Assembly: GCA_965112155.1 (NCBI GenBank)
Contig: OZ218103.1
Origin: Podarcis liolepis
Lineage: Eukaryota
DNA: 64,000 nt
Reading direction: 5' to 3' (one strand)
Numbering within the stretch: position 1 is the stretch's first letter; each line of letters begins with the position of its first letter. Of this stretch, positions 10,117 through 60,400 are shown piece after piece. The translations under genes and the position numbers were made by a program. The notes under the pieces are model-generated. The model did not search any database, was not told the origin of the DNA, and worked only from the letters and a program-made list of their open reading frames with translations.

Positions 10117-10181
10117 GTCGCAATGAATTGATAGCAAGGTACATCAAGTTACGGACGGGGAAAACAAGGACAAGGAAACAG
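10117..10181 (+). CDS. TEAD3: TEAD3 exon, TEA domain ([22 protein letters not shown])
   Basis: ccttag acceptor, CAG/gtaaaa donor, 65 nt, invariant TEA sequence. Confidence 0.96.
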
Positions 10182-13100: not shown

Positions 13101-16100
13101 GAAGTCAGGTTTAAACCCAAAAGAAATTGGGTTTCTACCCAAAATGTTTATACAGCTCTCAGAGCCATGGTCACATGTCCAATAGACAATTTCTGCTCTC
13201 AAAGCCTTGGATGCATAAAAACACTGCCATATATTATCACTTAGTGGTCAGTGGTAAAAAGTGTCTGTGTAAGGCGGTGGCATGTTGTTCTAGAGGGATC
13301 ACAATAGGTAGACTTATGATTCTGTTTGCTTAATTTAGTGGCAATACTGAGGTTAATTTCAAGCTTGTTTGAGTCCCTTGATGTTTAACGTCTTCTAAGG
13401 CAGGAGAAGATAAGATTAATCTTCTGTGAAAAGCTGTTGGTGATTATAATTCCACTCTAACACTTACTTACTTCTGTCTTGCTCTCTGAATGAAGAGCTG
13501 AAAAATATTTAAGAACCAGGGGACTGTGCACTTAGGTTTTTGAGACCCAGATTGGAAACTGTTTTCAATGCTTGATTGTGTATCAATTCAATTAGGAGAA
13601 CTGAAGAAGTGCATCTGGATTTACATGGCTATGGAGAGGAGTCATGTGGGTACAGATCTGGATCAGCAAAACATTATGTTGGGAATGGCTCATAGACTGA
13701 AGCATGAGTGGTTCCTAAAAGCATGATGATCAGTAGTACATAGAATTCTCATGAGAGTAAGCTACACTTACACTATTAAATGCTATTTGCAAAGGGTAAA
13801 ATCCCCAAATATAGCACACTATGCTCAAGTCCATGGCATTCAGTGGGTCTGTAGCAATTTCCTCCACTTGATAGGTTAGCCATATCATTACAGTCTGTAT
13901 TACCTGCCATTCATCCTGAGTACAGATCCTTCTCCTCTGGAATCTCACATGGCTTCAGAGGCTTGTTTGACTGTGTGTTGTGTGTGTGTGTGTGTCCAAC
14001 CTAGGTGCTTGAAGCACTCTTGTCACGCAAAACAATTTGGGATCATGTCTTCATTCTGTTTGTGTTTTCCTTTTTGAATGACTTGGCGGGGCGTAGGTGT
14101 CCAGCCACATACAGGTTCTAGCTCGGAAGAAGGTGCGAGAGTACCAGGTTGGCATTAAGGTACGTTGGAGACCCTGCCCATGCGTCCGTGGTGTGTGAGC
14201 ATGGGCAGCCCCCTCTCCTTCCTCTCCTTTCCTCTGGTTGACGGCTCTGCTGTTTTCCCCCCCTCTCCTTCTGCTTTTCTCTCTGCAGGTCTCTAGCCAC
14301 TTGCAGGTTCTAGCCAGACGGAAATCTCGTGAGATTCAGTCGAAGCTGAAGGTACGCGCTTCCCCGGCTTTCCCACCTTTTGAGCCATGGCCATGCTGGC
14401 AACTAACATGCTGCGCTCTGTGGTTGGTTGCCACTCTTTCCCCCCTGCTTGTTGTGTCTTTGCTCCCCTCCCTTTGTTCCTGGGACCTGATAATTTTCAG
14501 AATGCCGCTGAGGTGTGAGAGAGAATCAGAAGGAAAAAGCGATAGAGCACTTCTGCGTGGCAGGATCTGGCAAGGACAAGCCACCTCTAAACAGTCCAGT
14601 AAAGCTGTCCCTTGTCAGCTTGGAGAGTGCATTTCCAGTCACAACTGGAGCCTTCAGGTGGTGACATAGCAAGGAGAACTTCTAGAGTTCTCCACAGTCC
14701 ACCTGCCATCTTTGGTATATCCATGTAAGTGCTCCACTGTTGTTACAGGAACGGGAACCTTGCCTAAATCAGGAAAGCTGAGTAGGATCCATGGCGGCTC
14801 ATGAAATGTGCAGTCGTGGTATTAAACAGCCACTTCTGCTGAGCAACAACTGAGTGGAAGGGTCCCTCCCAGTAGAGGCATAGGACAGAACACCCTTCTC
14901 CTTCTGTTTCCATTCAACAGAAGAAGCCATTTCCTTCTGCTGTGCTACTTCACTGTCTACCACTCTGTAGCATTAAGATTTTCTAGGTAGCATTGGAGCT
15001 CTGGAGCAGGTTTTTGTTTTTTTAAAAAATGTTTTTCAAATAAGTGTTACTGATGTTCAATGATGCATCAAGCAGGGCTGACCATTAAAGTAGCAGACCC
15101 AAGGCTGCAATGAAACAAAACCAAAACACACTCCCCCACCCCACCCCAAAGCAGAAGAGCCAGACTTTTGGAAAGCATTCCGTGCTGGATGAGGATGGGG
15201 AAGTATACAGGGGGGGGACCCCAAAGTTTTGTAGGTACAAATTCTGATGGATTTATGCAGCTGAGGCTCATATAGCAGGCATAGGAATTTGTGCAATCAG
15301 TGCCTCTGTCATACTTCTAGTCTATATGGCCAACAGTCTTTAATACCTGGGGAGGATATTTGGCTAAGTTGGCCAGTGCAATGGTACAAGGCAATTAGGA
15401 TGGAGATGCACAGAACCAGAGATGAGTGTCTTCCATCATAGGCCTGCTCTTGCTGATTCAGGATGCTTGGACCAAGAACATGGGACCAGGAGCCAAGGAA
15501 GTTGAGCAGGGATAAAACTGGAGAGCTTTTATCCTGTGATTGCCTTTCTTTCTGTGGTTGGCTTTTCTTTTCTTCTTTCTTCTGTAACTTGAGATTGGCT
15601 AACCTTTCCTATTACCCTTTCCTCTGTGTGTTCTGTGTATTGTGATTTGGGTTTTTGAGGGGGGAGGGGGGTCTTAATGAATGGTTAGTGGTTGAAGGTT
15701 ATTTTGAACTGATTCTGGTTCTCTGTCTATTCTTGTGGTTTGGCCTATGCATCGGAAAGTACCTAGAAATTCCAATCTTTTCAGCTGTTCAAATTTATTT
15801 AGTCCAAAATACTCTCCCTTCCTTTTCTAGAGTCCACAAAGCAGGAGCTGCCATTACCAGGTTGGGAAAACTCATAAATAGTGTGCCGTCCCTCCCACCA
15901 TGCCCTCATTCCTCTACCCCAAACTAAGAAAATAATTGGCTGGTTTATAAGAAGATTAAATTGTGTGCATAAAGTGGCCCACACCCAAAATTCAGTTAAT
16001 AATAAAAACTCTCACAGTTGAAGAACAGCATGGAATGAAGGAAAATATCTTTTTAAAAGGATCTGTCCTTGTAGTCAGTAGCACACATTATATGATGAAC

Positions 16101-18999
16101 AGATGTAACTGTAGAACACTTTTACATATATGTTAATTCTAGTCAATAGCATGTCTTCCACAAAAGACAGACAATACATTGCCTGAGAGTTAGGGCTAGC
16201 ATGCTAGTCAACTGATGCTTGTTAGATTATGGCAAGATTTTGTCAAATATTCAAAAAATGCCCATGGCAGTGTTGTTGAGTTTTTAAAAATTATTATATC
16301 GTTATGGTCTCATTTGTTAAGTAGGGGAGGAGCAAATGTATCTTGCCTCCTAAGCTTACAGCTGACAGGGACAAACCTAGAAGCACATCAAAGCTTTTAA
16401 TTTAAGGCATATCTGAACAGAAATGCAAACAGTCATCAGTGGTATTGCCTAGTAAGTAAAGTGTCTGACTAGGGCGAGGGAGTGCTCAGAAAATAGGTTT
16501 CCCAACTCTGTCCTTGCAGTACTGTCGTTGCAAACCTATTTGAGAGGACCTTTTAAGTGCATGCCCATAAGTTCTGCCCTGTATCGCTGAACCACTCTAC
16601 CTCCAACCAGTGTGCTTTCGTGTTCTGCAATGGCAGAAGACTGGGCAAAGCAGTGGTATGCAGGTCCAGTTTACCACCTTGAGTCTTTAAAGAGAGAGCC
16701 AAAGGTAAACGGAGAAAACTGCAGAACATCTATTGGCCCATTTATCTACATCCAGGCTTAGGACTCTGCAAATTACGGTAGCCCCTCACAAATACCAAAG
16801 AATGATTTAACTACCTAGGTACTTTTTACTCCCCTTGCACTACTCCAAGAGTTATGTGCACGCAACTCAAGAAGCCTAAGCTTGTCCACCTACAGCAACA
16901 CCCTGTTTATTTTGTATAGCTTTGCAGGCAGGAGAGTGCAGTGACCAGATCTAGTGCATTGTTTGCACTAGTAACTCTGCAATCTATAAAATAATGTTGC
17001 TTTCAGTACCCAGACCGGCATCAGATTTGGAGAACCACAGAACAGGGCGGTCTGTTCTCACTTCCTGCACATCTTCCTTGATTTGTAAAATTGAAGAAGT
17101 TACCTATTGAGATAAGCCTCATACCATCCGCTCCTTTCTTCCTCATTCCCGTTGTGCCACGTGCCCCAGATCATCAAGTGGATTCAGTAAAACAGGCTGC
17201 ATTAGAAAGCAGCCCGGGACAGATGTAGTTTGTTTACAAAATGAAGTCTGACATCCTGTGATGCTTTGAAGTCCCATTATTGATACCTGTTATGGATTAT
17301 GCAGACTCCCCCCCTCCCCGCAGTGCCCATTATGACAGCAGAGGCACTAACCATATTTCTTTTCTTTCCTCCCTCCTCTTCACACAGGCTATGAACTTGG
17401 TAAGTGCACTTCAGTCTTGTTTCTGCCCCATTAAGTGTTCTCTACTTGGTGATTGTCTTTATCCTTATGCTGAGTGTTTAATTTTGTTGTATGCTGTGTG
17501 CTGCCTTGGTATCTATACTGGTGAAGGAGGGACCATACGGCTTTTAAATAAATAAATCCCCATGAATAGTATTAGAGAGTGCAGATGAGGTGCAGGGGTG
17601 CTGGAAGTGCAAAATTAATAGCTGAGATGAGAATCTTTTGGATACTTTGGACCATACTGGCTAAAAGCCAGCACCTTAAATGGATGTTTGTGTTCTCCTC
17701 CTTTGATCTACAGACATGTTGCACTGCTCTAAAGGATTTATTATCTATGACTAGTAAGATCCCTGGAAAAATGAGCTTTGGGGGGAGGGGAAGTGACATA
17801 AAACAGTTTGCTTGAATAGCTCACTGTCCCCCATTAATTTGTCTTTAGTGGGCCGTCAAGGCCAGTGTTAGTAACTCTCCCTTCTGCTTCTCCTCTTCTG
17901 TCCTGTTTTGAAGGATCAGGTCTCAAAGGACAAGGCTCTGCAGAGTATGGCTTCCATGTCGTCGGCACAGATCGTATCCGCCAGTGTCCTGCAGAACAAG
18001 CTCAGCCCCCCTCCTCCACTCCCTCAGGCTGTCTTCTCTGCTGCTCCCAGGGTAAGGGATGTTCCAACACTTTTCCTGCCTGGTTAGGAAGGTCAGGCCC
18101 AGAAGGACAGCATGGAGTCAATGCTTCTGCAAGACAGCGGCTTCTCTTATAGGGCTAGGTGACTAACGCAGAGATGGTTCCAGAGAGGATATTTATTTAT
18201 TAACTTATCTGTAGTTGTGTTCCTGACCCAATAGGCTTAGTTTAAATCAGACATCATAAGCGTAATTTACGTATTCCACACCCAACATCCATGTCTCCCT
18301 AATTTTCATTTTTGCCCAGTTTACTTAAAAATAAAATAAAAATAAAACCTAACTCATGCTCTTCCTCCCAACACCTTTCACTGTCACATATGGGAATGGT
18401 TCTCCAGTTGTTGTTAAAACTCCTTTGAGACTCAGCTAGCATGGCCAACGGTCAAAGAAGATGGGAGTTGTAATCCAATAACATCTGGAAAAACCATAGG
18501 TTCTCCATCCCTGCCCTAATTCTTCTTATCTGCACATGCCATCAGCACCACCACCAAAGAGTAGCATATCTGACCCACCCTCTCCCCTTAGTGGCTCACA
18601 AGAGAGTGGAGGACATGTACTGACTTGGTGTGAAACTCCCAGCTGTAGTCTTGACTCTCCTCAGCTGTGTTGTGGTATTTCCACACTATTCTAAAAAACT
18701 GACTAGCCGTTGCCATTCTGTAACAATAAACAACTTAAACAACCCTTTAACAACTTTGATGAACCTGAACAACTGTAGCTGTGAAGTCAGATGGTAGGAA
18801 TATGCATGACAATGTTTTCTGTGTTCATTTTTTGTTTCCTCAGTTTTGGAGTGGGCCTATCCCAGGACAGTCTGGACCTTCTCAGGAGTAAGTGAAAAGC
18901 AATTGTTACGTTTGGTGGAGAATTAAAAGGCTTAGCAGTTAGAGGACGGTACTTGCATAGCATTTCTGAATTGTTCCACAGAAATAGATGCCACATTGT

Positions 19000-22000: not shown

Positions 22001-25000
22001 CCATGCTGGCCTGAGCTGTTGGAAGTTGGAGCTCAACATCTGGAGATGTTGGCTGCTCCTGGTCTGGATGGTGGTAGCTGGCATTAAGGCAACTGAGTTT
22101 TGAATTTTGCGGCGTCAGCAGGAGTATCTGATTCCCTTTGTCATGGCTGAATCTTTGTAGTGAAGCACGCTACCTTCCGCTCCCACATTTTTTGCCATTT
22201 GTGTTTCCCACCCTACAGTATAGCAAGCACCTCTTTGTGCACATTGGACAGACGAACCCCTCGTACAGCGACCCGCTGCTGGAGGCAGTGGACATCCGCC
22301 AAATCTATGACAAGTTCCCTGAGAAGAAAGGTGGCCTGAAGGAGCTCTATGAGAGGGGGCCCCAGAACTCCTTTTTCCTGGTCAAGTTCTGGGTAAGAAT
22401 CTTGCAGCCCAAAGCCGAACAATGCCTCTGAAAAAGCCATTATTGGGTACTTCTTCATCGGACAAGGAGGCTAAGGAAATTAGACCAGAGGACCATGGTT
22501 ACATTATTCTCCTATATGAATGTGGATGTTGTTTGGATGATGGGAGGGGGGATGCTTTCTGGCCTCAGATTCTCCACATCAGTGGGCAGTCGCATGTTTC
22601 ATGTGGTTTTGCCTGGCTTTATATGCTAAGCAGGCTTGACCCAGGCATCTTGGTAGAAGAGCCTAAGGGATATTAAAAATGAAACGAAATTCTGAAGGGG
22701 TCTGGGGAAAAGGGTTCATCCTTTAGAAAAAGAGCTGCATTCAATAGCATGTTTTGAGGTCTAAGCAATGCCATGGTATTATTCTCGCACAAATGTTCAT
22801 AGAATCATAGACTCTATAAGAGTTGGAAGGGACCCCCGAGGGGCATCTAGTCCAACCCCCTGCAATGCAGGAATCTCAGCTAAAGCGTCCATGACAGGTG
22901 GCCTTCCAACATCTGCTTAAAAACCTCCAAGGAAGAAGAGACCACCACCTCTCGTGGGAGTCTGTTCCACTGCCGAACAGCTCCTACTGTCATAAAGTTT
23001 TTTTCGAATGTTTAGTCGGAATCTCCTTTCTTGTAACTTGAAGCCATTGGTTTGAGTCCTGTCCTCCAGAACAGGAGAAAAGAAGCATGTTCCCTCTTCC
23101 ATTTGACAGCCCTTAAGATATTTGAAGATGGCTATCATATCTCCTCCCAGTCTCCTCTTTTCCAGGCTTCTCATAAGGCTTAGTTTCCAGATCCTTTATC
23201 ATCTTGGTTGCCCTCCTCTGAACACATTCCGGCTCCCGTAGCACATACTGCAAGACCAGCCGGTGTTTTACATTGGCTTTGCTCTACCATCTGAATTTTT
23301 TAATGCCACTCTGCAGCATTCAGCCTGGTTTGAGCCTCCTTTGGAACTGTGGCTTAATATTGCCTAAATGCTGTCACTCTCCCCTGCCATCAAATCTTAA
23401 AAGCTGTTGTCATCCCACACTGAGCATTTTCAGTTCGTCTTCTCAGCCCTTCGCTAAAAATACATGAGCCGATGTGGTCCAGCTTGGAATGCTTGTGAGA
23501 CTTCATTTCAAATTCCATCTCAGCTGTGGACTTCGGGCGAGTCACCTCCATTCTCCATCTACAAAATGGGCATAAAAGCAAAGAGTGGCAGTGAGGCTGA
23601 ATGAGATAAGGGTTAGAAAGCAGCTTGCTATTTTTAAATACTTATGTCAATAATTAGCAGTATCACCATGAATACACTTCTCTGTTGGCATCTTCGCTCC
23701 CCTCAGTGAATGCATCTCGGAACTCTTGGGTCGGAGACCTCTGCGCCCCAAGCAGAAAGCCACAATCCGTACTTGATTTATAACACCTCCTTCTTTGCCT
23801 TTGCTCTAGGCGGATCTGAACAGCACCATTCAGGATGGTCCTGGTGCTTTTTATGGCGTAAGCAGTCAGTATAGCAGTGCAGAAAACATGACCATCACAG
23901 TCTCCACTAAAGTGTGCTCCTTCGGAAAGCAAGTAGTCGAGAAGGTGGAGGTGAGTCCTGCGCTTCCTTTGGGTCTGGTACCAGCAGGAAGGGAATGTTG
24001 CAGAGTGGGTGAAGAGCATAGCAGTTAATGTGGGACTGGAAGTTAAGTTCTTGGGAAGAACGTACAGCCCAAGGGGAAAGTGCTTTGGGACTCTTTAAGT
24101 GCTAACAGTACATGTATAATAAGTAGCAATGTATGCGTTATCAGAATGTCAGTATAGTCCTCTCTTCCTTTCCCCCTGCTGCTTAATTATGGATAATTAG
24201 GGTGTGCCACCTCCCCAGTTCTCCTACACCAAGCTTGAATGCCATTCGATACACAATAATAAATCAATAAACAAATCTCTCTCATATTATTGCACCTTCA
24301 GTGGCTTCTTTGTTAGGGTCTATACCTTATCAATGCTTTTTCTGCAGACGGAATTTGCCCGGATGGAGAACGGACGGTGTGTGTACCGAATCCATCGGTC
24401 CCCCATGTGCGAATATATGATCAACTTTATCCATAAACTGAAACACCTCCCAGAAAAATACATGATGAACAGCGTCCTGGAGAATTTCACCATCCTGCAG
24501 GTAAATAACATTTTCCTTCTATCCTGAATCCTTTCCAGCTGGTGCAAGGAGTAACTTCTGTCTGGATGTTCATAGTAGGCTTTTCATGGCTGAAGACACC
24601 AACTGGATAGTTTCAGATTTGGTCATACTTGGAGTAAAAACCCATTGAAATAAATTGTACAAGTTAGGTCATTGGTTTCAATGAGTTTACCTATAATATG
24701 ACTAAATCTGGGCCTGTAGCAGCAAAAGCAGACCCCTTCATCTGCCCCACTTGTAATAAAACCTCTCTCTCCCCTACAGCTACAAGCAGGTGCTGTATCT
24801 CTCCAATGGTTTGACTTTAGACACACTCTTCCATTGTTCCCCAAGACAGATGGATGCCAATAACCAGGATCCAACCAAAATAACAATTGCATTCCTTTCT
24901 TCCTGTTGTTTTTTATTCTACCTTTCAATGTCGTGCTCATCATCTGCTTCTTTCAAGAAGGCAATGGTTTGTCATGAAGACATTTCTTATGAGGAAAATA

Positions 25001-42700: not shown

Positions 42701-45369
42701 AACTGCTTCACAAGCAAGAAAGAACTGCGGTGCTATCCCCAGGGGATTCGTATTGACTACATTCTGTATAAGGTATGTGCAAGTTCAACACATAGAAAGC
42801 GGCAGTACAGAGTTCAGAAAGCAGTTAAGCAATAAAGGCTGTCAAATATGGTTTGGCACTAGCCCCATGACAGGTCTGTCTCCTGACAGTATCTTCAGTC
42901 TGGAATGTCTTCTTTGTCCAATAGTCTCCAAAACTATGTGCTCACAGACTGGTATGGCCTCAGGCAACCTCTTGGCACCGGGCTGAACTCACTTGCTTGA
43001 TTTCCTGCTGTTGTTGTCTTTGGGCATGTTCTGTGTAACAGCTGGGACTGGCTTTTCAAGATATGAGGATAACACTTAAAGCTTTAGAGCCAAAATGAGC
43101 AAAGCACTAAGCACACTTCTGCAAGAACTTGCTGCATTTGGGGAGTTAGATTAGCTTGCACTGCTTGATCACTTCCTGAACTCTAAACATGTGGGCACTA
43201 CTTAGACCACAGCTGTTGCTACTTCCTACACAGGGGTGTGGAAAGTTGCCCGAGATATCCAGCCTTTCCTGTAAGAGGGGAACTACAGTTGTAACTAATT
43301 CCTCGGTTTGAGGTGGACGTTTGTGAGAACCATGGCCCTATGTTGATTTTGGGGAGAATTCAGAAGAGGGTAGCAAATATGGTTAAAGGTCACATCATTG
43401 AGAAAAGGTGAAAAGAACTGAGCACATCTATTACCCATGAGAAAATCAGATTGACGTTGAGCCTGAAAATAATCTTCAGTCTGTATCAAAATCTTACCCC
43501 AAAGCTGATGGCAAGAATGCGCCTGTTGCCAAACACTGTAGATGTCGGGCAATGGATTTTAAATGGCAAAAGCTTAGATTTAAGATGAATTTGCTGAAAG
43601 AACAAGCCACGGGAGCAAGTTGCCCGAAGACATTGCTGAATAGTTTTCCTTGGAGTTGCATGGTCAAATAAGCACATGATAGAACAGACATAGGAATTCT
43701 TTAGCTGATCCTTGAGGACACTTCCAAATTACTTGACATGAGCCAACAGTGTGATGCGGCAGCTAAAAAAGCCAATGCAATTCTGGGCTGCATCAGTAGG
43801 AGTATAGCATCTAGATTAAGGGAAGTAATAGTGCCACTGTATTCTGCTCTGGTCAGACCTCACCTGGAGTACTGTGTCCAGTTCTGGGCACCACAGTTCA
43901 AGAAGGACACTGACAAACTGGAACGTGTCCAGAGGAGGGCAACCAAAATGGTCAAAGGCCTGGAAACGATGCCTTATGAGGAACGGCTAAGTGAGCTGGG
44001 CATGTTTAGCCTGGAGAAGAGGAGGTTAAGGGGTGATACGATAGCCATGTTCAAATATATAAAAGTATGTCATATAGAGGAGGGAGAAAGGTTGTTTTCT
44101 GCTGCTCCAGAGAAGCGGACACGGAGCAATGGATCCAAACTACAAGAAAGAAGATTCCACCTAAACATTAGGAAGAACTTCCTGACAGTAAGAGCTGTTC
44201 GACAGTGGAATTTGCTGCCAAGGAGTGTGGTGGAGTCTCCTGCTTTGGAGGTCTTTAAGCAGAGGCTTGACAACCATATGTCAGGAGTGCTCTGATGGTG
44301 TTTCCTGCTTGGCAGGGGGTTGGACTCGATGGCCCTTGTGGTCTCTTCCAACTCTATGATTCTATGATTCTACTTCTGTCATTCAAAGAGGACTCTAATA
44401 AGATCGTTCCCCACCCTCTTCACCTGTAGCCCACAGCCTTGAATTTCTGGGAGCCTTACTTATTTAAAACACATGTGCATAATAAGCACCTTGCTCTCCT
44501 GCTTCACTTCCCTTCTTGTAGGGTTTGTCTCACTATGAAGTAAAATGCAACCGCCATGAGACAACTACTGGAACAGCTCCCAACAAGGACATACCTTATT
44601 CCGACCATGAAGCTGTCATAGCCACACTCTCTGTGAACAAGAGAGCGTTAGGCAAATGCCTAAACCATCCTAGAGTTGGTGAGTACCCCAGTTTCATTGC
44701 TTTGGCACAGGAGGGAGCAAGTACGCATGCCTTTGGGAAGTGGGGAGGGATGGCAAAGCCTGCCTGGTCCATCCCCAGTGGTGCTCCTTCAAGGCCTGTT
44801 CTCGCCCATTAACCTCCCTGGAGAGAAGAGTGTGGCCGTTGTGCTAGCGCCCTGGCTTCTCTGCAGGCATGCACTACCATAGTCAAGAAGCCAGTATCTC
44901 TGCATAAAGTAGAAGTCTTGGCCTGTCTCTCCAGACCACCGAGTGGGCTTGGACACAAATGTCTTAGGACTTTTACTGCCTCAACGTGCATGGTGGTTGA
45001 GTCCTGTTGCCGTCTGTCTTCCTAGAACCGGTGCTGGTGGACGTCTTGAACGAAGCCCGTATGGAGGTGCGGGTAGGGCTGCACGCGGCCGAGCGGCAGC
45101 AGTACTCCTGCGGCCGTATGGCCGTCCTGGCCATGCTGCTGCTGCTCATGCAGGCGACCATGGGCGTGAGCTCCATGTTTGGCGAAGCCCTCCTGCAGCC
45201 CTTCCCCAAGTTCTCCTTCTCGCTGCTCAGCCTGCTGGGGGTGCTGGTGTTGCTCATCTCGGCTGTGCTCTACCTCTTCCACACCATCGAGGTCAAGGTG
45301 CTCCAGGGGACAGAGGAGCAGATGCGGGTGGGGCTGCAGACACTCCAGGACAAGCTGAGCTCTCGGTGA
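36672..45369 (+). CDS. SMPD2: Neutral sphingomyelinase 1 (sphingomyelin phosphodiesterase 2), complete, 10 coding exons, 1230 nt / 409 aa
   Basis: Spliced product [17 protein letters not shown]...LALLQEVWSE...GSGL...NGYPYM...GDWFGGK...VTHLHAEY...GDLNMHP...RIDYILYK...SDHEA plus two C-terminal hydrophobic segments; all phases consistent; EEP-fold catalytic motifs intact. Confidence 0.96.
37831..37927 (+). CDS. SMPD2: SMPD2 coding exon 2 (AIRYLSK...DLALLQE)
   Basis: ttccag / gtgagt, 97 nt. Confidence 0.95.
38180..38256 (+). CDS. SMPD2: SMPD2 coding exon 3 (VWSERDY...HYFKS)
   Basis: ttccag / gtaaaa, 77 nt. Confidence 0.95.
39181..39274 (+). CDS. SMPD2: SMPD2 coding exon 4 (GVIGSGL...NGYPYM)
   Basis: tcacag / gtgagt, 94 nt. 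Confidence 0.95.
39402..39491 (+). CDS. SMPD2: SMPD2 coding exon 5 ([10 protein letters not shown]...YVTH)
   Basis: ctacag / gtgagc, 90 nt. Confidence 0.95.
39674..39914. mobile_element. Tc1/mariner MITE related to 6796-7006
   Basis: TA-CAGTCATACCT...GACTG-TA; same left terminus. Confidence 0.7.
41519..41601 (+). CDS. SMPD2: SMPD2 coding exon 6 ([10 protein letters not shown]...WELAQFI)
   Basis: cccaag / gtaagt, 83 nt. Confidence 0.94.
41917..42049 (+). CDS. SMPD2: SMPD2 coding exon 7 ([19 protein letters not shown]...)
   Basis: tcccag / gtgagt, 133 nt. Confidence 0.95.
42668..42772 (+). CDS. SMPD2: SMPD2 coding exon 8 (GGEDGSTL...RIDYILYK)
   Basis: tcctag / gtatgt, 105 nt. Confidence 0.95.
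43735..44370 (+). mobile_element. 5'-truncated young CR1 LINE in SMPD2 intron 8
   Basis: Uninterrupted ORF2 C-terminus ([17 protein letters not shown]...[10 protein letters not shown]...), (TTCTATGA)n tail, flanking TACTT duplication. Confidence 0.95.
44522..44678 (+). CDS. SMPD2: SMPD2 coding exon 9 (contains catalytic SDH)
   Basis: ttgtag / gtgagt, 157 nt. Confidence 0.94.
45026..45369 (+). CDS. SMPD2: SMPD2 last coding exon (two transmembrane segments)
   Basis: tcctag acceptor, TGA at 45367-45369; LYLFHTIEV resembles human FYLFHVQEV. Confidence 0.94.
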
Positions 45370-54400: not shown

Positions 54401-57400
54401 GAACATCGCACAGCACACACAAATGGATATGCTACTCAGGAAGCCCTGAAGCCATATGCAGCTGTACAGGAAAGAGCACATGGTGACAGCTGAGCATGGC
54501 CTTTGACACTTAGGTTTAAAATCAAAGGTGGGGGAGCCATTTCAATGGCTCGGATGTTGTTCTGTTTTGGTGAGGTTTCCTCCCATGTTTATGGTCTGCC
54601 CCAAACTTTTTGGATAAGGCATATGATATATAAATAAAACAACCTTCTGAGATGGTGCTGAAGCTGGGTTCTTCTATTTTCATATCTGGAAAGTGAAATG
54701 AGGCTGATATTGGACTCAGTCGGGATAACTCAAGCTTTTCCAGGGCTGACAAGCAAATCTTTTTCTTTGGGAGATTTCCACACTCCTTCTGTTCTAGTTT
54801 GGAGCTCTGAGCAGTTGGCACCTTTCCAGAAAGAAAAGGATCTGTATCAGTTCCTTGAATTCCTGTCACCAGGCTGTCACGTGTCTCTTCTTGGGACTGG
54901 CTGCCAGTCCAGTTTTCTGGTTCAAGTCTCTCTCTTTTTGGACTGGCCTTGTTTCCATCTCTGCCTTCACCTACAACCTCTGAAGTTAAACCAGCCTCAG
55001 AAACAGAGTCCGCCAACTTCTTGTCCACCTCCACTAATGGTTGACGATGTGGATGCCAGGATGAGTTCATAGTACAAGAGCCTCCATTTACTCTGGCTGG
55101 GAGTAAGCTGTGGCCTTCAGCAGCTGATTTATGAAGTTCTGTAGGCAGCTGATCTTCGAAAGACAGCAGGTTCTCATCCAGGCGTGGTTGATATGGACCC
55201 TTTTCCATCTTATTGTCCTCGGCAGCCAAGTCCAGAATGCCTTTGTCTGAAGGAATGAGGAGTTTGGAGGAATCCTAGGGAGACAAAAAAGCCGGTTTTC
55301 CAAGCAAGCAAGTTGCAAGGCTGTCGCCCATGAGCGTGACAGGAAGTAACATGGAATACGCTACTGGACAGAGTTACTAGGTTAATTATCAGCTAGGGAG
55401 CTGCCTTGCTAGTCAGCACCAAATGCCTCCAATTCTGAAAAGGCATCCATCCCACTCACCTTACGTGCTGCTCTGACAGAGGTTGTGCTGCTGGGTGTAG
55501 TTATGTCCTCGGAGGTAGGACAGTGCAGCATGCAGTAGAAATTACCTAGGAGTAAAATCAAGACAGCCATAATCAGGTAGGGTATGTTGCTTGCATTCAC
55601 CTGACTTGCCAATAAACATGACTGCCAGGGCAGATTCAGATACCTGAAGGAGAATAAAAGCAAATGGCGCAAATGAATCTTGATATGCACTTGCAGGAAG
55701 TAGAGACACAATGCAAAGAAAGGCAGCCAGTTTGGATTTCAGAGAAATCAATGCCCCCGTCTGCACTGACGGCTGTGCCATTCAGGCTAAGCAACTACGT
55801 CTTCTCAACTCCACTCACCGTCATCTTCATTGAAGGCGTAGTCCCCCAGGCGCAGTGTCGTCTTGCAGCGGCGACACTTGAAACAGCCACGGTGGAAGAA
55901 GCATCCCTCCGCGCTGACTCGCTCCAGGATGTACACACGATCTCCGCAGAAATAGCAGGCATCGCTGCTCCTCACTGAGGAGGTGACAGGGCTCTGCCAA
56001 AAGACCAACACCTTTAGGACCAAACGTTCCAAGTCATCTTGTGCTTTGGTTTCAAAATACATGGTTCAACCCAATGAGACACATTAACAAATATCCACAA
56101 GTTGCTGGACTACAACTCTCATGATCCCTGAGCTCCTGCTGGGATGATGGGAGTTGTAATCCAACAACATCTGGGAGAGCCGCTGGTCCCCCACCCCTGG
56201 TAATGGTAACAGCCCTCTGGGCTCTCTGCCTCCGACATTTGGCGATGACCTCACTCCATCCCGAGTGAGATAAACGTATCAGGCAGCATTACAAGTTACA
56301 TTCCAATGTCTTCCGCCAAGAAAACAGCCTCAACAAGACAATGGCTACAAGGTCCAGCAAGTCGTTCCTTTCCGTCAGATAAGAGGAAGGGCGGGTTTGA
56401 GTCTCGAGAGAAGAGAGCTGCCAGGCTCTCTGCCAGTATGTAACTGAAGCACATGAATGCAATAAAAATCTTCGTTTTTTGCCCAGTGACATCTGGCTTC
56501 TTCCAGGCCTAACAGCTGTTTCAGCTTGGCTTATGCATGAGAGCTAGCAGCCTGCAGCCTGATACAGGGAGGAACATTTAGCAGCCGCCCTGAGTGTGGG
56601 CAAGTGGTCAGCCTTCATAGGCAGCATCCAACCTCCTCGCAACTGTTATTTGCCTCCAGTGTATCCTACCAGCCAGAATTCTGGTGCAACGTTTTGTGTG
56701 AAAAGGGAGGAAATCAATATTTTTTTGAGCACTTAAAAATAAATTTTGTGGTGGGCCACAGCAAAGTTCAAATTGGAACTGAGGCAGGGTGGGATTTCCC
56801 AAATGACATTTGAGTTCCAATTTTCACAGGCGGAATTTGACCCTCGGGATCAGTCTTTGAACTGCAGTCTTAAAGTTATATTAGTTATCTGGCAGTTGCA
56901 GTCAATAAACTGCATGCACTGGATTTCCCATCATGTGTTAAAAGGTCAGAAAATCTACAGAGTCAATAGCAATGACTCAAATAAGGAGGGTTATGGAGTT
57001 TCCTTAAATGAAACTCCCTGAAATACACACTGGATTAAAAAATGGAATTTTTCAGAAGCAATGAATTTTCAGAAGCAATGAATTTCCATTCCCAACACTA
57101 CTCTGGACCCAGACATATCTAATGTTAACTTCACACATAACCAGATTCCTGCAATGAAGGCATTTCCATGTAGAAATTCACAGGAAAACCAAAATGTAAC
57201 CATAATGTGTGAAGATGCTGCACTCAAAAGAGTTCCCCTCCCCACCGTATATTCATGCAATGGGAAACTGCAGATGGCTAAAGCTTCCCGCAGGCAGTGA
57301 AATACCACAGGAGTTTGGTATACAATGATCCACATGCAGATTTCATGTTCATTTTTTCAAGCCAGTACCTTCCATGTGGAATCATCACATATGACATCCT

Positions 57401-60400
57401 CTAAAACTTGTCTAGTACCAGATGAACCCCTAAGTGCGATGACGGAAGAACTTACCCCAGCCTCTTGCTTGGTCTTTTTGGCTTGGTCATCCATTGCAGA
57501 GCTCTCCTGCAATCGAAAATTATGACTTTGGAGCAGCAGAAAAGACAGAAGGCCAAAGACACTTTGCTCCTGCAATAAACGTAACCCCCACTGCCAGCCC
57601 CCCGTCCTGTGCTTCTTACTAGGGACATCTGAAAATGGGGAGAGCTAAAGTGATCTGGGAAGAGATCATACCAGCTGCCAAAAGGCCACTAGCCAGCACA
57701 TAAGGCACAAACAAACACACTGCTGGGAATGTCTGGTGATGGGCTAGCAATGGCTGTGGAGAGAGACTCACCAGGGCACGTTTACGTGAGAGAGAGAGAC
57801 TTTTCTGAAGCTTGCTGAGGAAGAGGATCGCTCCCTTGGTACCACGTGTTGACAGAATCATCGAACTTTTCTCTTCTGGTTCTGGAAGAGAGAATGCAGT
57901 GTTTAGGAACTTGGGAAGCTGCCAGATACTAGTCCATCTAGCTCAGTACTCTACTGTCTACAATGACTGTGGCAGCAGCTTCCCAGGGGTCCCCGAACTA
58001 CCTGGAGATGCTGCAGATTGAACCTGGAATTGAACCTGGGAAGAGTCCCCAAGGACCAGGCAGAGAGGCCTGGAAACAAGGTTCCCCACTCCCCTTGTGA
58101 GGCTTCCCTTGTAGGAAAATCCCCAGGACTGGGTTCCTTGGGACTCCCTACCTGGAGAGCTCTTGAAGGCATCATAAAACTGGCTCAGGTAGGTGATCAA
58201 GCCAAGCCTCTGATGTTCAGACATCGAAGCCATTTCAGTGCTGGAGAGGACCGGAGGGATCCCTAGCTCTTGCTCTGCCACGTCTAAGGCCAGCTGGTTG
58301 TTCCCAATGGGGTCGTTCTGGTTGAGTGCGTTGACGTCTCTAGAGAAGGAAGATACAAAGTCAAGGTGACTGACAGGACTTAGCCCAGACTGAGAGAAAC
58401 TTTAACCAGACACCTGAAGCAGAAGGTGAAGTGTGTGACAGTTTCTTTAAAAACGATAGCAAAACAACTCCCAGCTCATGACAAGCTGGCTTGTGTGAAG
58501 CGGCTGCCATGTGTATTACTGGGCACCAGGAGGCAGTCATACAAATTATGTTTCACTTTAAACAAAACAGGAAAACCACACACAGCACTGCTTCCAGTAA
58601 TGGGATGTCAGCCAGCAATCCTCCCACCCCTGTTTTAACAACCTTGCTCCCATCTCATTTCACTATGCAAGGACAGGAGGACTCCCTGCTTCTCTTGATC
58701 ATCAAAAACAGGCAAATGAAATGTCGCTGCCATCCTATCTGGCAGGCAAGACTGTGAAGCAACAGACTCCCAGGTTGGGGAGTCTGTGGCTTTGTGGCCA
58801 TCAACCCCCTGAAACACCCTCTAGGAATTGAGAAACACGCAGAGACTGCTTTGTGGTGGGGTGGGGCACCTATTTCAGACTGAAGACCACACTCCCTTCC
58901 CACAGCCTTGGGTAAGTGTCCCATGGCAGTGGCAGGCAGGGAGACTTTTTTTTTTTTTTTTTTTGTTTCCTGCTTGGCAGGGGGTTGGACTCGATGGCCC
59001 TTGTGGTCTCTTCCAACTCTATGATTCTATGATTCTATGAAAAGTGGGTAGAGCAATTAGTGTAAATTCTATCTTTGTACAGTAGCTGGTTTCTTCACAC
59101 CTGCAGCTCCCTCCCTCTCCTCCATCCAGGCAAGTAAGAGGCCTGATCGGATCTCAAGACACATCCCAGCCAGGCACAGGGACTCAAGGAGGTGCAAAAT
59201 AAAGGATGTCATGTGGGGAAAGTCCCACAGGAGAGAGCTGGAGAGATGTGTTTGGCTCCTGGGCCTGAGGTTCTCCATCAAGTCACATCTGCCTTTATGG
59301 CCACCCTCTCTTTCTCCGTGACTGGTAAGAGGGAGGGAAGAAAGGATGGTTGCTGTGGGGAAGAGGCTTGAGAATTGGTACCTCTCTAGATCAGCAAGGC
59401 AAAAGCTACCTGCAGGCCACAAGGTCTTCCCATGCCTGGCCTAGCTTGACCCTGACATCTGAGGCTCAGTGGACTCCCCTTGGTTCTGAACCTCCAACAC
59501 AAAGGAAGGCTAGGATGGAAGCGTTCAGCTCTGCTTTTCTGAAGTAGAACTATATAGAGTAGGAGAGTTCCACTCACAACACAAAGGCAGCAGCACCATG
59601 TGGTGATTTCTAGAGGGGGATAGATGCTGAGCTTCCCAAAATGGAACAAATCACCAGGTCAGTAATGGAGATCTCTAGGCTGACTAGATCTGTGGCTCAC
59701 ACACACAGCTTCTATCCCAGCATCAAATGGCAACTTGCATGTCTGTGAGCCACCACAGATCAAACTTCTTGCAAATCTCTGCATATCACTTTGTACATAA
59801 GACATTTCACTGCAGTCCATTCACACTTTCAGCTGTGTTATAAAGAATTAAGAAATAAAGGCATATATGGACTAGCCCTTAATTTAGGCCTTTGGGATAC
59901 ACAGTTTGCTGAATGTGTGTGTGATTTAGAAAAAAAAGCACTTAGCCACAGAATAAGTTGACCTGCACAACAAATTTAAAATATATTTTTCTACAAATGG
60001 ACAGTATAATCACTCTGAAGTAGCGTTTCCTGAGCGGTACAGCAATAGCTAATCGTTATGCCTTTATAAAGTTTGCCTCTAATGTGCCTACAAGCATTCC
60101 CTCCCTCCGGCAAGGCTCACTCACAGAAGATCTGGTCGGAAGTGATGTATGAGGGCACACAGGGCCAGGCCACTTTTCCAGGAGGATGTGAAGTCTTCTA
60201 CCTTGATGCCACGATAATTTGCTGTATTAGTTTGACACCAGCTAAGCAGCTCCTCATAGGCTCTGTTGGAATCTGGAGAAGGGTGGATGAAGGATGATGG
60301 AAGGGAGAGAGAGAAAGAGCAAACCAAGCTAAGGGTACATGAAAGAGGGCCACTTGGTCCAGTTCCCAAGATGTACCTAGTGACAAGCAGGTATTGGGAA

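What the first reader, a model, noticed from the sequence alone, without database searches (positions are those of the whole stretch)
14097..14351. Tandem duplicated exons give TEAD3 two swappable DNA-recognition helices
Seen: two intact 63-nt phase-0 exons 129 nt apart, [21 protein letters not shown] (A) and [21 protein letters not shown] (B), both ending AAG/gtacg, with many synonymous differences but a conserved peptide. Known: this segment is TEA helix 3 plus the basic NLS region; A is canonical TEAD3 and B resembles TEAD1/2/4. From memory, a similar duplicated exon exists in TEAD1, so the architecture may be old but is little studied in TEAD3. Inference: mutually exclusive use (or dual inclusion giving a doubled helix) lets one gene switch DNA-binding, cooperativity or localisation properties.
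Basis: partly seen in the sequence, partly recalled or inferred. Interest (0 to 1): 0.8.

Follow-up and report, generated by a model that had tools for sequence, protein, structure and literature searches.

The report
Old alternative exon pair in TEAD3
A reptile TEAD3 gene carries two neighbouring look-alike 63-base exons for the end of its DNA-binding domain; the pair is real and over 450 million years old, but it is already annotated in many vertebrates, so it is a known, little-studied feature.

Summary
Observation confirmed. Exon A (14097-14159) and exon B (14289-14351) are intact 63-nt phase-0 exons, AG-preceded, GTACG-followed, 129 nt apart. They share 38/63 bases and 14/21 residues.

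The window is a reptile TEAD3 gene (94% to Pogona TEF-5), not human.

Both peptides are almost invariant from cartilaginous fish to mammals, so B is not decaying. TEAD1 and a lamprey TEAD hold the same pair. A-types resemble each other more than B-types, so the duplication predates the TEAD1/TEAD3 split.

Public RefSeq/Ensembl models carry A only, B only, A+B and neither, in sharks, sturgeons, teleosts, reptiles, birds, monotremes and placentals. [quoted passage not shown] From memory, chicken DTEF-1A/1B (1996) is this event.

Interpretation partly supported. These are two in-frame cassette exons, not an enforced either/or pair. The first ten residues, the helix-3 part, are nearly identical; differences lie in the basic tail. 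"Swappable recognition helices" overstates it.

Verdict: already known; interest about 0.3.

The parts
10117..10181 (+). Upstream constitutive TEA-domain exon (..[22 protein letters not shown]). It encodes helix 2 and the N-terminal half of helix 3.
   Evidence: AG before, GTAAAA after; Pfam TEA PF01285 positions 37-57, E 4.5e-7.
14097..14159 (+). Exon A, 63 nt, phase 0: [21 protein letters not shown] (the 'divergent' TEAD3-type tail, no Ser at position 13).
   Evidence: Identical peptide in amniote TEAD3 models.
14160..14288 (+). 129-nt intron between A and B. It holds a perfect 10-bp hairpin (14174-14183 / 14199-14208), a single GCATG at 14199 inside the 3' arm, a candidate branch site TTGAC at 14238, and a pyrimidine tract of about 85 nt before exon B.
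   Evidence: The fold z-score is -2.3 to -2.4. Conservation could not be tested.
14289..14351 (+). Exon B, 63 nt, phase 0: [21 protein letters not shown] (TEAD1/2/4-like tail with an RRKS motif).
   Evidence: The peptide is identical from ray-finned fish to mammals.
14517..14534 (+). Purine-rich arm complementary (16 of 18) to the pyrimidine tract 14266-14283 just before exon B. The pairing would loop out exon B.
   Evidence: repeat I1. The pairing is kept in the minimum-energy fold of 14160-14545. It is low-complexity sequence, so it may be chance.
17388..17399 (+). 12-nt microexon AMNL, itself optional in many annotated isoforms. It occupies the same position as the TEAD1 microexon VTSM/VTNM.
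   Evidence: Isoforms with and without AMNL are seen. The TEAD1 microexon is described in PMC9410899.
17914..18051 (+). Next constitutive exon ([21 protein letters not shown]...AAPR).
22219..22392 (+). YAP-binding-domain exon, used as the query to fetch TEAD relatives.
   Evidence: Pfam YBD PF17725, E 2.2e-12.

Best explanation
This is the vertebrate-wide pair of tandemly duplicated, homologous 63-nt cassette exons of TEAD3, seen here in a reptile. Each exon encodes one version of the C-terminal half of TEA-domain helix 3 plus the basic tail that follows it.

The duplication arose before the TEAD1/TEAD3 split and before the lamprey lineage branched off. Both copies have been kept under strong purifying selection since then.

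Both exons are 63 nt in phase 0 and the intron between them is a spliceable 129 nt. Splicing can therefore yield A only, B only, A+B (a 21-residue in-frame internal repeat that extends helix 3) or neither. All four are annotated in other vertebrates.

The DNA-reading residues are the same in both versions: TRTRKQ comes from the upstream exon, followed by VSSH[I/L]QVLAR. Exon choice should therefore tune the tail rather than base specificity. The tail differs in charge (B has an extra Lys at position 19 and Arg at 11), in helix extension, and in bony vertebrates in an RRKS kinase motif that B has and A lacks.

Shown: the anatomy, the conservation, the annotated isoforms in other species, and published splicing evidence in zebrafish tead3b and human TEAD1. 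Inferred: that this reptile uses both exons, how the choice is regulated, and what the functional difference is.
For: Anatomy.

Gene identity: Pfam TEA and YBD hits; 94.3% identity to Pogona TEF-5 over the downstream exons.

Position in the fold: PDB alignments to TEAD4 and TEAD1 DNA-binding domains.

Conservation: 109 of the 120 best hits hold A and B in tandem with nearly invariant peptides, from chimaera, sharks, Polypterus and gar to birds and mammals.

All four isoform classes occur in RefSeq/Ensembl models. Examples: Pogona X1 = A+B and X3 = B only; Chrysemys X3 and two geckos = B only; platypus F6VM38 = B only and A0A6I8N143 = A only; Lepidochelys X1 = neither.

TEAD1 pair: frog isoforms with A only, B only and A+B.

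Age: lamprey P0234 holds the pair. A-types are 18-20/21 identical to one another and 13-17/21 to B-types.

Papers: zebrafish tead3b mutually exclusive exon confirmed by PCR (PMC6120630). [quoted passage not shown] PKA and PKC phosphorylation inhibit TEAD DNA binding (PMC6628201).

Structure: an AlphaFold model of the Pogona A+B isoform gives one continuous helix over residues 65-110 through both copies.
Against: Predicted A+B and 'neither' models may partly be annotation artefacts, because both exons look coding to a gene predictor.

The zebrafish paper does not say in its text which tead3b exons are the exclusive pair.

The AlphaFold model is weak: mean pLDDT 60, falling to 52-65 over the repeat.

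The RRKS serine is not ancestral. Shark TEAD3 exon B, lamprey exon B and TEAD4 all have RRKA. A kinase switch therefore cannot be the original reason for keeping two exons.

No functional comparison of A and B forms was found in the searchable library.
Confidence: 0.75

Rival explanations
1. Strict mutually exclusive switch. Every mRNA carries exactly one of A or B, enforced by RNA structure (the hairpin next to the exon A donor, or looping-out of exon B) or by a factor bound at the GCAUG between the exons. On this reading, A+B and neither models are annotation artefacts.
For: The zebrafish tead3b event was classed and PCR-confirmed as mutually exclusive. From memory, chicken DTEF-1A/1B differ by a one-for-one swap. 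There is a perfect 10-bp hairpin 14 nt after the exon A donor and a GCATG in its arm. The pairing 14266-14283 with 14517-14534 is kept in the minimum-energy fold.
Against: The 129-nt intron is long enough to be spliced, and the candidate branch site lies about 80 nt from the donor. A+B and neither both stay in frame, so nonsense-mediated decay cannot remove them. A+B models are annotated in dozens of species. For TEAD1 the A-type exon behaves as a regulated cassette that gives an internal repeat. The folds are only modestly better than shuffles (z about -2.3), and one arm pair is low-complexity sequence.
Confidence: 0.15
2. Exon B (or exon A) is an unused relic in this lineage. Only one exon is ever spliced in, and the other merely looks intact.
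For: No RNA data could be read for this animal. A review of human data states that TEAD3 has no cassette exons (PMC9410899).
Against: Both peptides are unchanged across more than 450 million years while synonymous sites differ: 6 of the 14 codons that keep the same residue in both exons differ synonymously between A and B. Both exons keep AG/GT sites. Lizard, gecko, turtle and bird annotations include B-only, A-only and A+B isoforms.
Confidence: 0.05
3. The main product is the A+B form, and the single-exon forms are minor. The doubled segment acts as a longer rigid helix that spaces the DNA-binding domain from the linker.
For: A+B is 'isoform X1' in many RefSeq sets. AlphaFold predicts one continuous helix through both copies.
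Against: X1 is usually just the longest model. The searches were seeded with an A+B query, so A+B forms are over-sampled. With a B-only query, the new hits were 28 A-only, 26 B-only and 12 A+B. Mammalian reference proteins are A only (P0045).
Confidence: 0.05

Closest known systems
Chicken DTEF-1A / DTEF-1B (TEAD3) isoforms, Azakie et al. 1996, J Biol Chem 271:8260 (recalled from memory; the paper is not held)
   Same: Same gene (TEAD3/DTEF-1) in a sauropsid. The two cDNAs are reported to differ by alternative splicing at the C-terminus of the TEA DNA-binding domain, which is where exons A and B lie.
   Different: I could not read the paper, so I cannot confirm that the two cDNAs correspond exactly to A and B. 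The recalled 433 versus 432 residues suggests another small difference as well.
Zebrafish tead3b mutually exclusive exon (Nudelman et al. 2018, Genome Res, PMC6120630)
   Same: TEAD3 orthologue. Long-read isoforms were validated by exon-specific PCR, and usage differs between maternal and zygotic RNA. Teleost tead3b models hold the same A and B peptides.
   Different: The text does not name the exons. No functional test was done. Fish annotation also has many A+B models.
[quoted passage not shown] 2011, PMC3158048)
   Same: A paralogous exon pair of the same length, position and order: [21 protein letters not shown] followed by [21 protein letters not shown]. Splicing is regulated.
   Different: In TEAD1 the B-type exon is the default and A is the optional cassette. 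In amniote TEAD3 the reference protein is A-type. The paper treats it as a skipped exon, not as an exclusive pair.
Classical tandem-duplicated mutually exclusive exons (for example alpha-tropomyosin exons 2/3, FGFR2 IIIb/IIIc; from general knowledge)
   Same: Adjacent homologous exons of equal length and phase that arose by exon duplication and encode alternative versions of one structural element.
   Different: Here exclusivity is not enforced by a too-short intron or by a frameshift leading to nonsense-mediated decay. Double inclusion and double skipping are in frame and are annotated.

Membership tests
TEAD3 (TEF-5 / DTEF-1) orthologue | N-terminal TEA/ATTS DNA-binding domain | tested here: met
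   Pfam PF01285 hit on exon 10119-10181, E 4.5e-7. Exons A and B align to TEAD1 and TEAD4 DNA-binding-domain chains. The first TEA exon (WSPDIEQSF..) lies outside the window.
TEAD3 (TEF-5 / DTEF-1) orthologue | C-terminal YAP-binding domain | tested here: met
   Pfam PF17725 hits on three exons, E 2e-12 to 1e-8.
TEAD3 (TEF-5 / DTEF-1) orthologue | Closest to proteins annotated TEF-5/TEAD3 rather than TEAD1, TEAD2 or TEAD4 | tested here: met
   Identity over the downstream exons is 94.3% to Pogona TEF-5, 93.6% to Mauremys, 93.1% to colubroid snakes and 75% to a frog. The A peptide [11 protein letters not shown] is specific to TEAD3.
Tandem-duplicated alternative exon pair | Adjacent exons of the same length and phase, with sequence homology and intact splice sites | tested here: met
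   63 nt each, phase 0, 38/63 bases and 14/21 residues shared, AG...GTACG at both.
Tandem-duplicated alternative exon pair | Both copies kept by selection in other species | tested here: met
   Peptides are nearly invariant from cartilaginous fish to mammals, and the pair is present in TEAD1 and in lamprey.
Mutually exclusive exons in the strict sense | Transcripts contain exactly one of the two exons | tested here: inconclusive
   No reads could be laid. Public models include A only, B only, A+B and neither. The zebrafish event is called mutually exclusive. The TEAD1 event is a cassette giving an internal repeat.
Mutually exclusive exons in the strict sense | An enforcing mechanism: an intron too short to splice, incompatible spliceosomes, or a frameshift leading to nonsense-mediated decay | tested here: not met
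   The intron is 129 nt with GT-AG ends, and the candidate branch site is about 80 nt from the donor. Both exons are multiples of 3, so all combinations stay in frame. Enforcement by RNA structure remains possible but untested.

The most novel reading that the evidence does not exclude
Exon choice is a conserved regulatory switch on TEAD DNA binding that the Hippo field has overlooked. B-type tails (RRKS, extra lysine) would make TEAD3 and TEAD1 sensitive to PKA/PKC-type inhibition of DNA binding, or change nuclear import or partner contacts. A-type tails would be insensitive. The A+B form would add a rigid 21-residue helical spacer. The choice would be set by the intronic hairpin/GCAUG element between the exons. 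If so, TEAD3 and TEAD1 each encode three or four functionally distinct DNA-binding domains, kept for more than 500 million years.
Probability: 0.25. Interest if true: 0.55.

Novelty: already known. Interest (0 to 1): 0.3.

Why it matters
TEAD proteins are the DNA-binding end of the Hippo/YAP pathway, and work on them usually treats each paralogue as a single protein. This exon pair alters the end of the DNA-binding domain. It has been kept in two paralogues since before the jawed and jawless vertebrates split, so the isoforms very probably differ in function, yet I found no study comparing A, B and A+B forms. For the scan the finding is a correct reading of a feature that genome annotation and a few papers already record. 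It adds a reptile example and no new principle.

Tried and rejected
1. RNA-seq evidence. The look-up of sequencing runs listed candidate RNA runs.

3. Transcript-derived fragments. A word search with the stop-free frame around exon 17914-18051 found 14 short proteins, all unspliced genomic read-throughs. This was a dead end.

4. Papers not held: Azakie 1996, Gupta 2000 and Das 2012. The chicken DTEF-1A/1B link and the exact PKA serine rest on memory.

5. P0151, an unnamed 303-aa hit with a divergent 'pair', is a read-through artefact with three TEA-exon copies and says nothing about invertebrates. P0158, labelled Lampetra planeri, looks teleost-like, so I relied on Lethenteron P0234 for lamprey.

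6. Steric exclusion by a short intron is rejected: the intron is 129 nt.

Exons were searched one at a time by reference, and full-length comparisons used public proteins.

8. The window is not human. Primate proteins appeared in cluster lists and were only classified. No human contig was fetched.

Full report
**What is there**

The stretch 14097-14351 holds two 63-nt open exons. Exon A (14097-14159) encodes [21 protein letters not shown]. Exon B (14289-14351) encodes [21 protein letters not shown]. Each is preceded by AG and followed by GTACG, and the intron between them is 129 nt.

They lie in a TEAD gene on the + strand.
- The upstream exon 10117-10181 encodes ..[22 protein letters not shown] and matches Pfam TEA positions 37-57.
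- Downstream come a 12-nt microexon AMNL (17388-17399) and the exon 17914-18051.
- YAP-binding-domain exons follow up to about 25.9 kb.
- The first TEA exon is outside the window.

Over the downstream exons the gene is 94.3% identical to Pogona vitticeps TEF-5, 93.6% to a turtle and 93.1% to colubroid snakes. The window is therefore a reptile TEAD3 locus, not human.

A and B share 38/63 bases. Eight codons are identical, 6 differ only synonymously and 7 change the residue.

**Where it sits in the protein**

Both peptides align to the solved DNA-binding domains of TEAD4 (5gzb_A 66-86) and TEAD1 (2hzd_A 64-79). B is the closer match: E 3.6e-6 and 18/21 identical to TEAD4, against E 0.0028 for A.

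The exon boundary falls inside helix 3. TRTRKQ comes from the upstream exon, and VSSH[I/L]QVLAR from either alternative exon. Helix 3 lies in the major groove, and loop L1, not helix 3, is credited with cooperative binding (PMC5876656; PMC7547805).

The two exons are identical over residues 1-10 except I/L. They differ at positions 11 (K/R), 13 (V/S), 16 (Y/I), 18 (V/S), 19 (G/K) and 20 (I/L). What is swapped is the end of helix 3 and the basic tail, not the base-reading face.

**Conservation**

The one exhaustive search, seeded with the YBD exon 22219-22392, returned three kinds of TEAD3-like representatives:
- B only: P0015, Scleropages isoform X2.
- A only: P0045.
- A and B in tandem: P0016 (Oryzias) and P0005 (penguin).

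It also returned TEAD1 proteins with an equivalent tandem pair, [21 protein letters not shown] followed by [21 protein letters not shown] (P0084, P0085).

A word search with P0016 residues 150-232 gave 3053 hits. Of the 120 best, 109 hold A then B. They come from chimaera and sharks, Polypterus, sturgeon, gar, Amia, many teleosts, a frog, birds, marsupials and placentals.
- Exon B is [21 protein letters not shown] from ray-finned fish to mammals, and [21 protein letters not shown] in cartilaginous fish.
- Exon A is [17 protein letters not shown][AV][GS]IK.

A lamprey TEAD (P0234) also holds the pair. A-type peptides of TEAD3, TEAD1 and lamprey are 18-20/21 identical to one another. B-types are 16-19/21 identical to one another, and A versus B is 13-17/21. 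The duplication therefore predates the TEAD1/TEAD3 split and the lamprey split.

B is, if anything, the more conserved copy.

**How the exons are used elsewhere**

I listed members of ten 90%-identity clusters and classified them. A second word search used a B-only lizard protein. Together they show public RefSeq/Ensembl models of all four kinds.
- A only: rays, sturgeon, salmonids, birds, platypus A0A6I8N143, many placentals.
- B only: rays, paddlefish, salmonids, Pogona X3, Chrysemys X3, two geckos, birds, marsupials, platypus F6VM38, many placentals.
- A+B: nearly every group, often as isoform X1.
- Neither: Lepidochelys X1, a skate, paddlefish.

Frog TEAD1 shows A only, B only and A+B as well.

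These are predicted models, and some may be artefacts. My first queries held both exons and so over-sampled A+B. With the B-only query, the 67 new hits split into 28 A, 26 B and 12 A+B, with one holding neither exon.

**Published evidence**

- A mutually exclusive exon in zebrafish tead3b was seen in long reads and confirmed by PCR, with different use in maternal and zygotic RNA (PMC6120630).
[quoted passage not shown] Double inclusion is therefore real for the paralogue.
- A 2022 TEAD1 paper states that TEAD3 alone lacks cassette exons in human data and studies the 12-nt microexon (PMC9410899).
- From memory, the chicken cDNAs DTEF-1A and DTEF-1B (Azakie et al. 1996) differ by alternative splicing at the C-terminus of the TEA domain. 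That paper is not in the library.

**Mechanism**

Nothing in the anatomy enforces exclusivity. The intron is 129 nt with GT-AG ends. The best branch-site candidate (TTGAC at 14238) is about 80 nt from the exon A donor and 47 nt from the exon B acceptor. All four outcomes stay in frame. I therefore read the pair as two homologous cassette exons whose inclusion may be anti-correlated by regulation.

Candidate regulatory elements, none tested for conservation, are:
- a perfect 10-bp hairpin 14174-14183/14199-14208 just after the exon A donor, already noted by another first-stage reader;
- the only GCATG of the intron, inside the hairpin's 3' arm;
- a 16/18 pairing between the exon B pyrimidine tract (14266-14283) and 14517-14534, which would loop out exon B.

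Both pairings persist in the minimum-energy fold of 14160-14545, with z -2.4 and 2 of 100 shuffles as stable. The second pair is low-complexity sequence and may be chance.

At the protein level, an AlphaFold model of the Pogona A+B isoform predicts one continuous helix over residues 65-110 running through both copies. Confidence falls from 84 to 52-65 (mean pLDDT 60).

B carries RRKS and A carries RKKV. PKA and PKC phosphorylation are reported to inhibit TEAD DNA binding (PMC6628201). The exact serine is from memory. Shark TEAD3 exon B, lamprey exon B and TEAD4 all have RRKA, so a phospho-switch cannot be the ancestral reason for keeping two exons. The constant differences are K/R at 11, V versus S/A at 13, and a small-residue versus Lys-Leu ending.

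**What could not be done**

The last word search found only unspliced genomic fragments. Exons were searched singly by reference, and full-length work used public proteins.

**Verdict**

It is not shown to be mutually exclusive, and it does not swap the recognition face of the helix. The feature is already in public annotation and in a few papers, so it is already known. What remains open is the functional difference between A, B and A+B TEAD isoforms, which nobody seems to have measured. Interest is 0.3.

Noticed in passing
window 17388-17399: A 12-nt microexon (AMNL) lies between the A/B pair and the next exon, in the same position as the RBFOX2-regulated TEAD1 microexon (VTSM). Annotated TEAD3 isoforms in many species exist with and without it, in combination with A, B or A+B. 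There is no GCATG within 17200-17950.
   Followed up: partly
window 14174-14208: A perfect 10-bp hairpin sits 14 nt after the exon A donor, and its 3' arm holds the only GCATG of the A-B intron. Another first-stage note (s1-847092) proposes a steric switch. The fold is modestly better than shuffles (z -2.3), and conservation could not be tested.
   Followed up: partly
window 14266-14283 and 14517-14534: An 18-nt inverted repeat (16/18 complementary) pairs the exon B pyrimidine tract with a purine-rich stretch downstream of exon B. The pairing would loop out exon B. It is low-complexity sequence and possibly chance.
   Followed up: partly
window 55808-56065 and 57961-58401, minus strand: Open frames with a LIM domain (E 9e-7) and a calponin-homology domain (E 3e-6) point to a MICAL-like gene on the minus strand downstream of TEAD3.
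   Followed up: partly
window 43705-44292, plus strand: A 196-aa open frame with a ..[18 protein letters not shown].. motif looks, from memory, like the C-terminal part of a CR1-type LINE reverse transcriptase. It had no Pfam hit at E 0.01.
   Followed up: partly
protein cluster of P0193: Several turtle RefSeq proteins named 'tubby-related protein 1' (P0277, P0283, P0286) sit in the 90%-identity TEAD3 cluster. They are probably mis-named or read-through models involving the neighbouring TULP1 gene.
   Followed up: no
P0158: The protein labelled Lampetra planeri TEF-5-like is almost identical to teleost tead3b. It may be contamination or mislabelling in that assembly.
   Followed up: no
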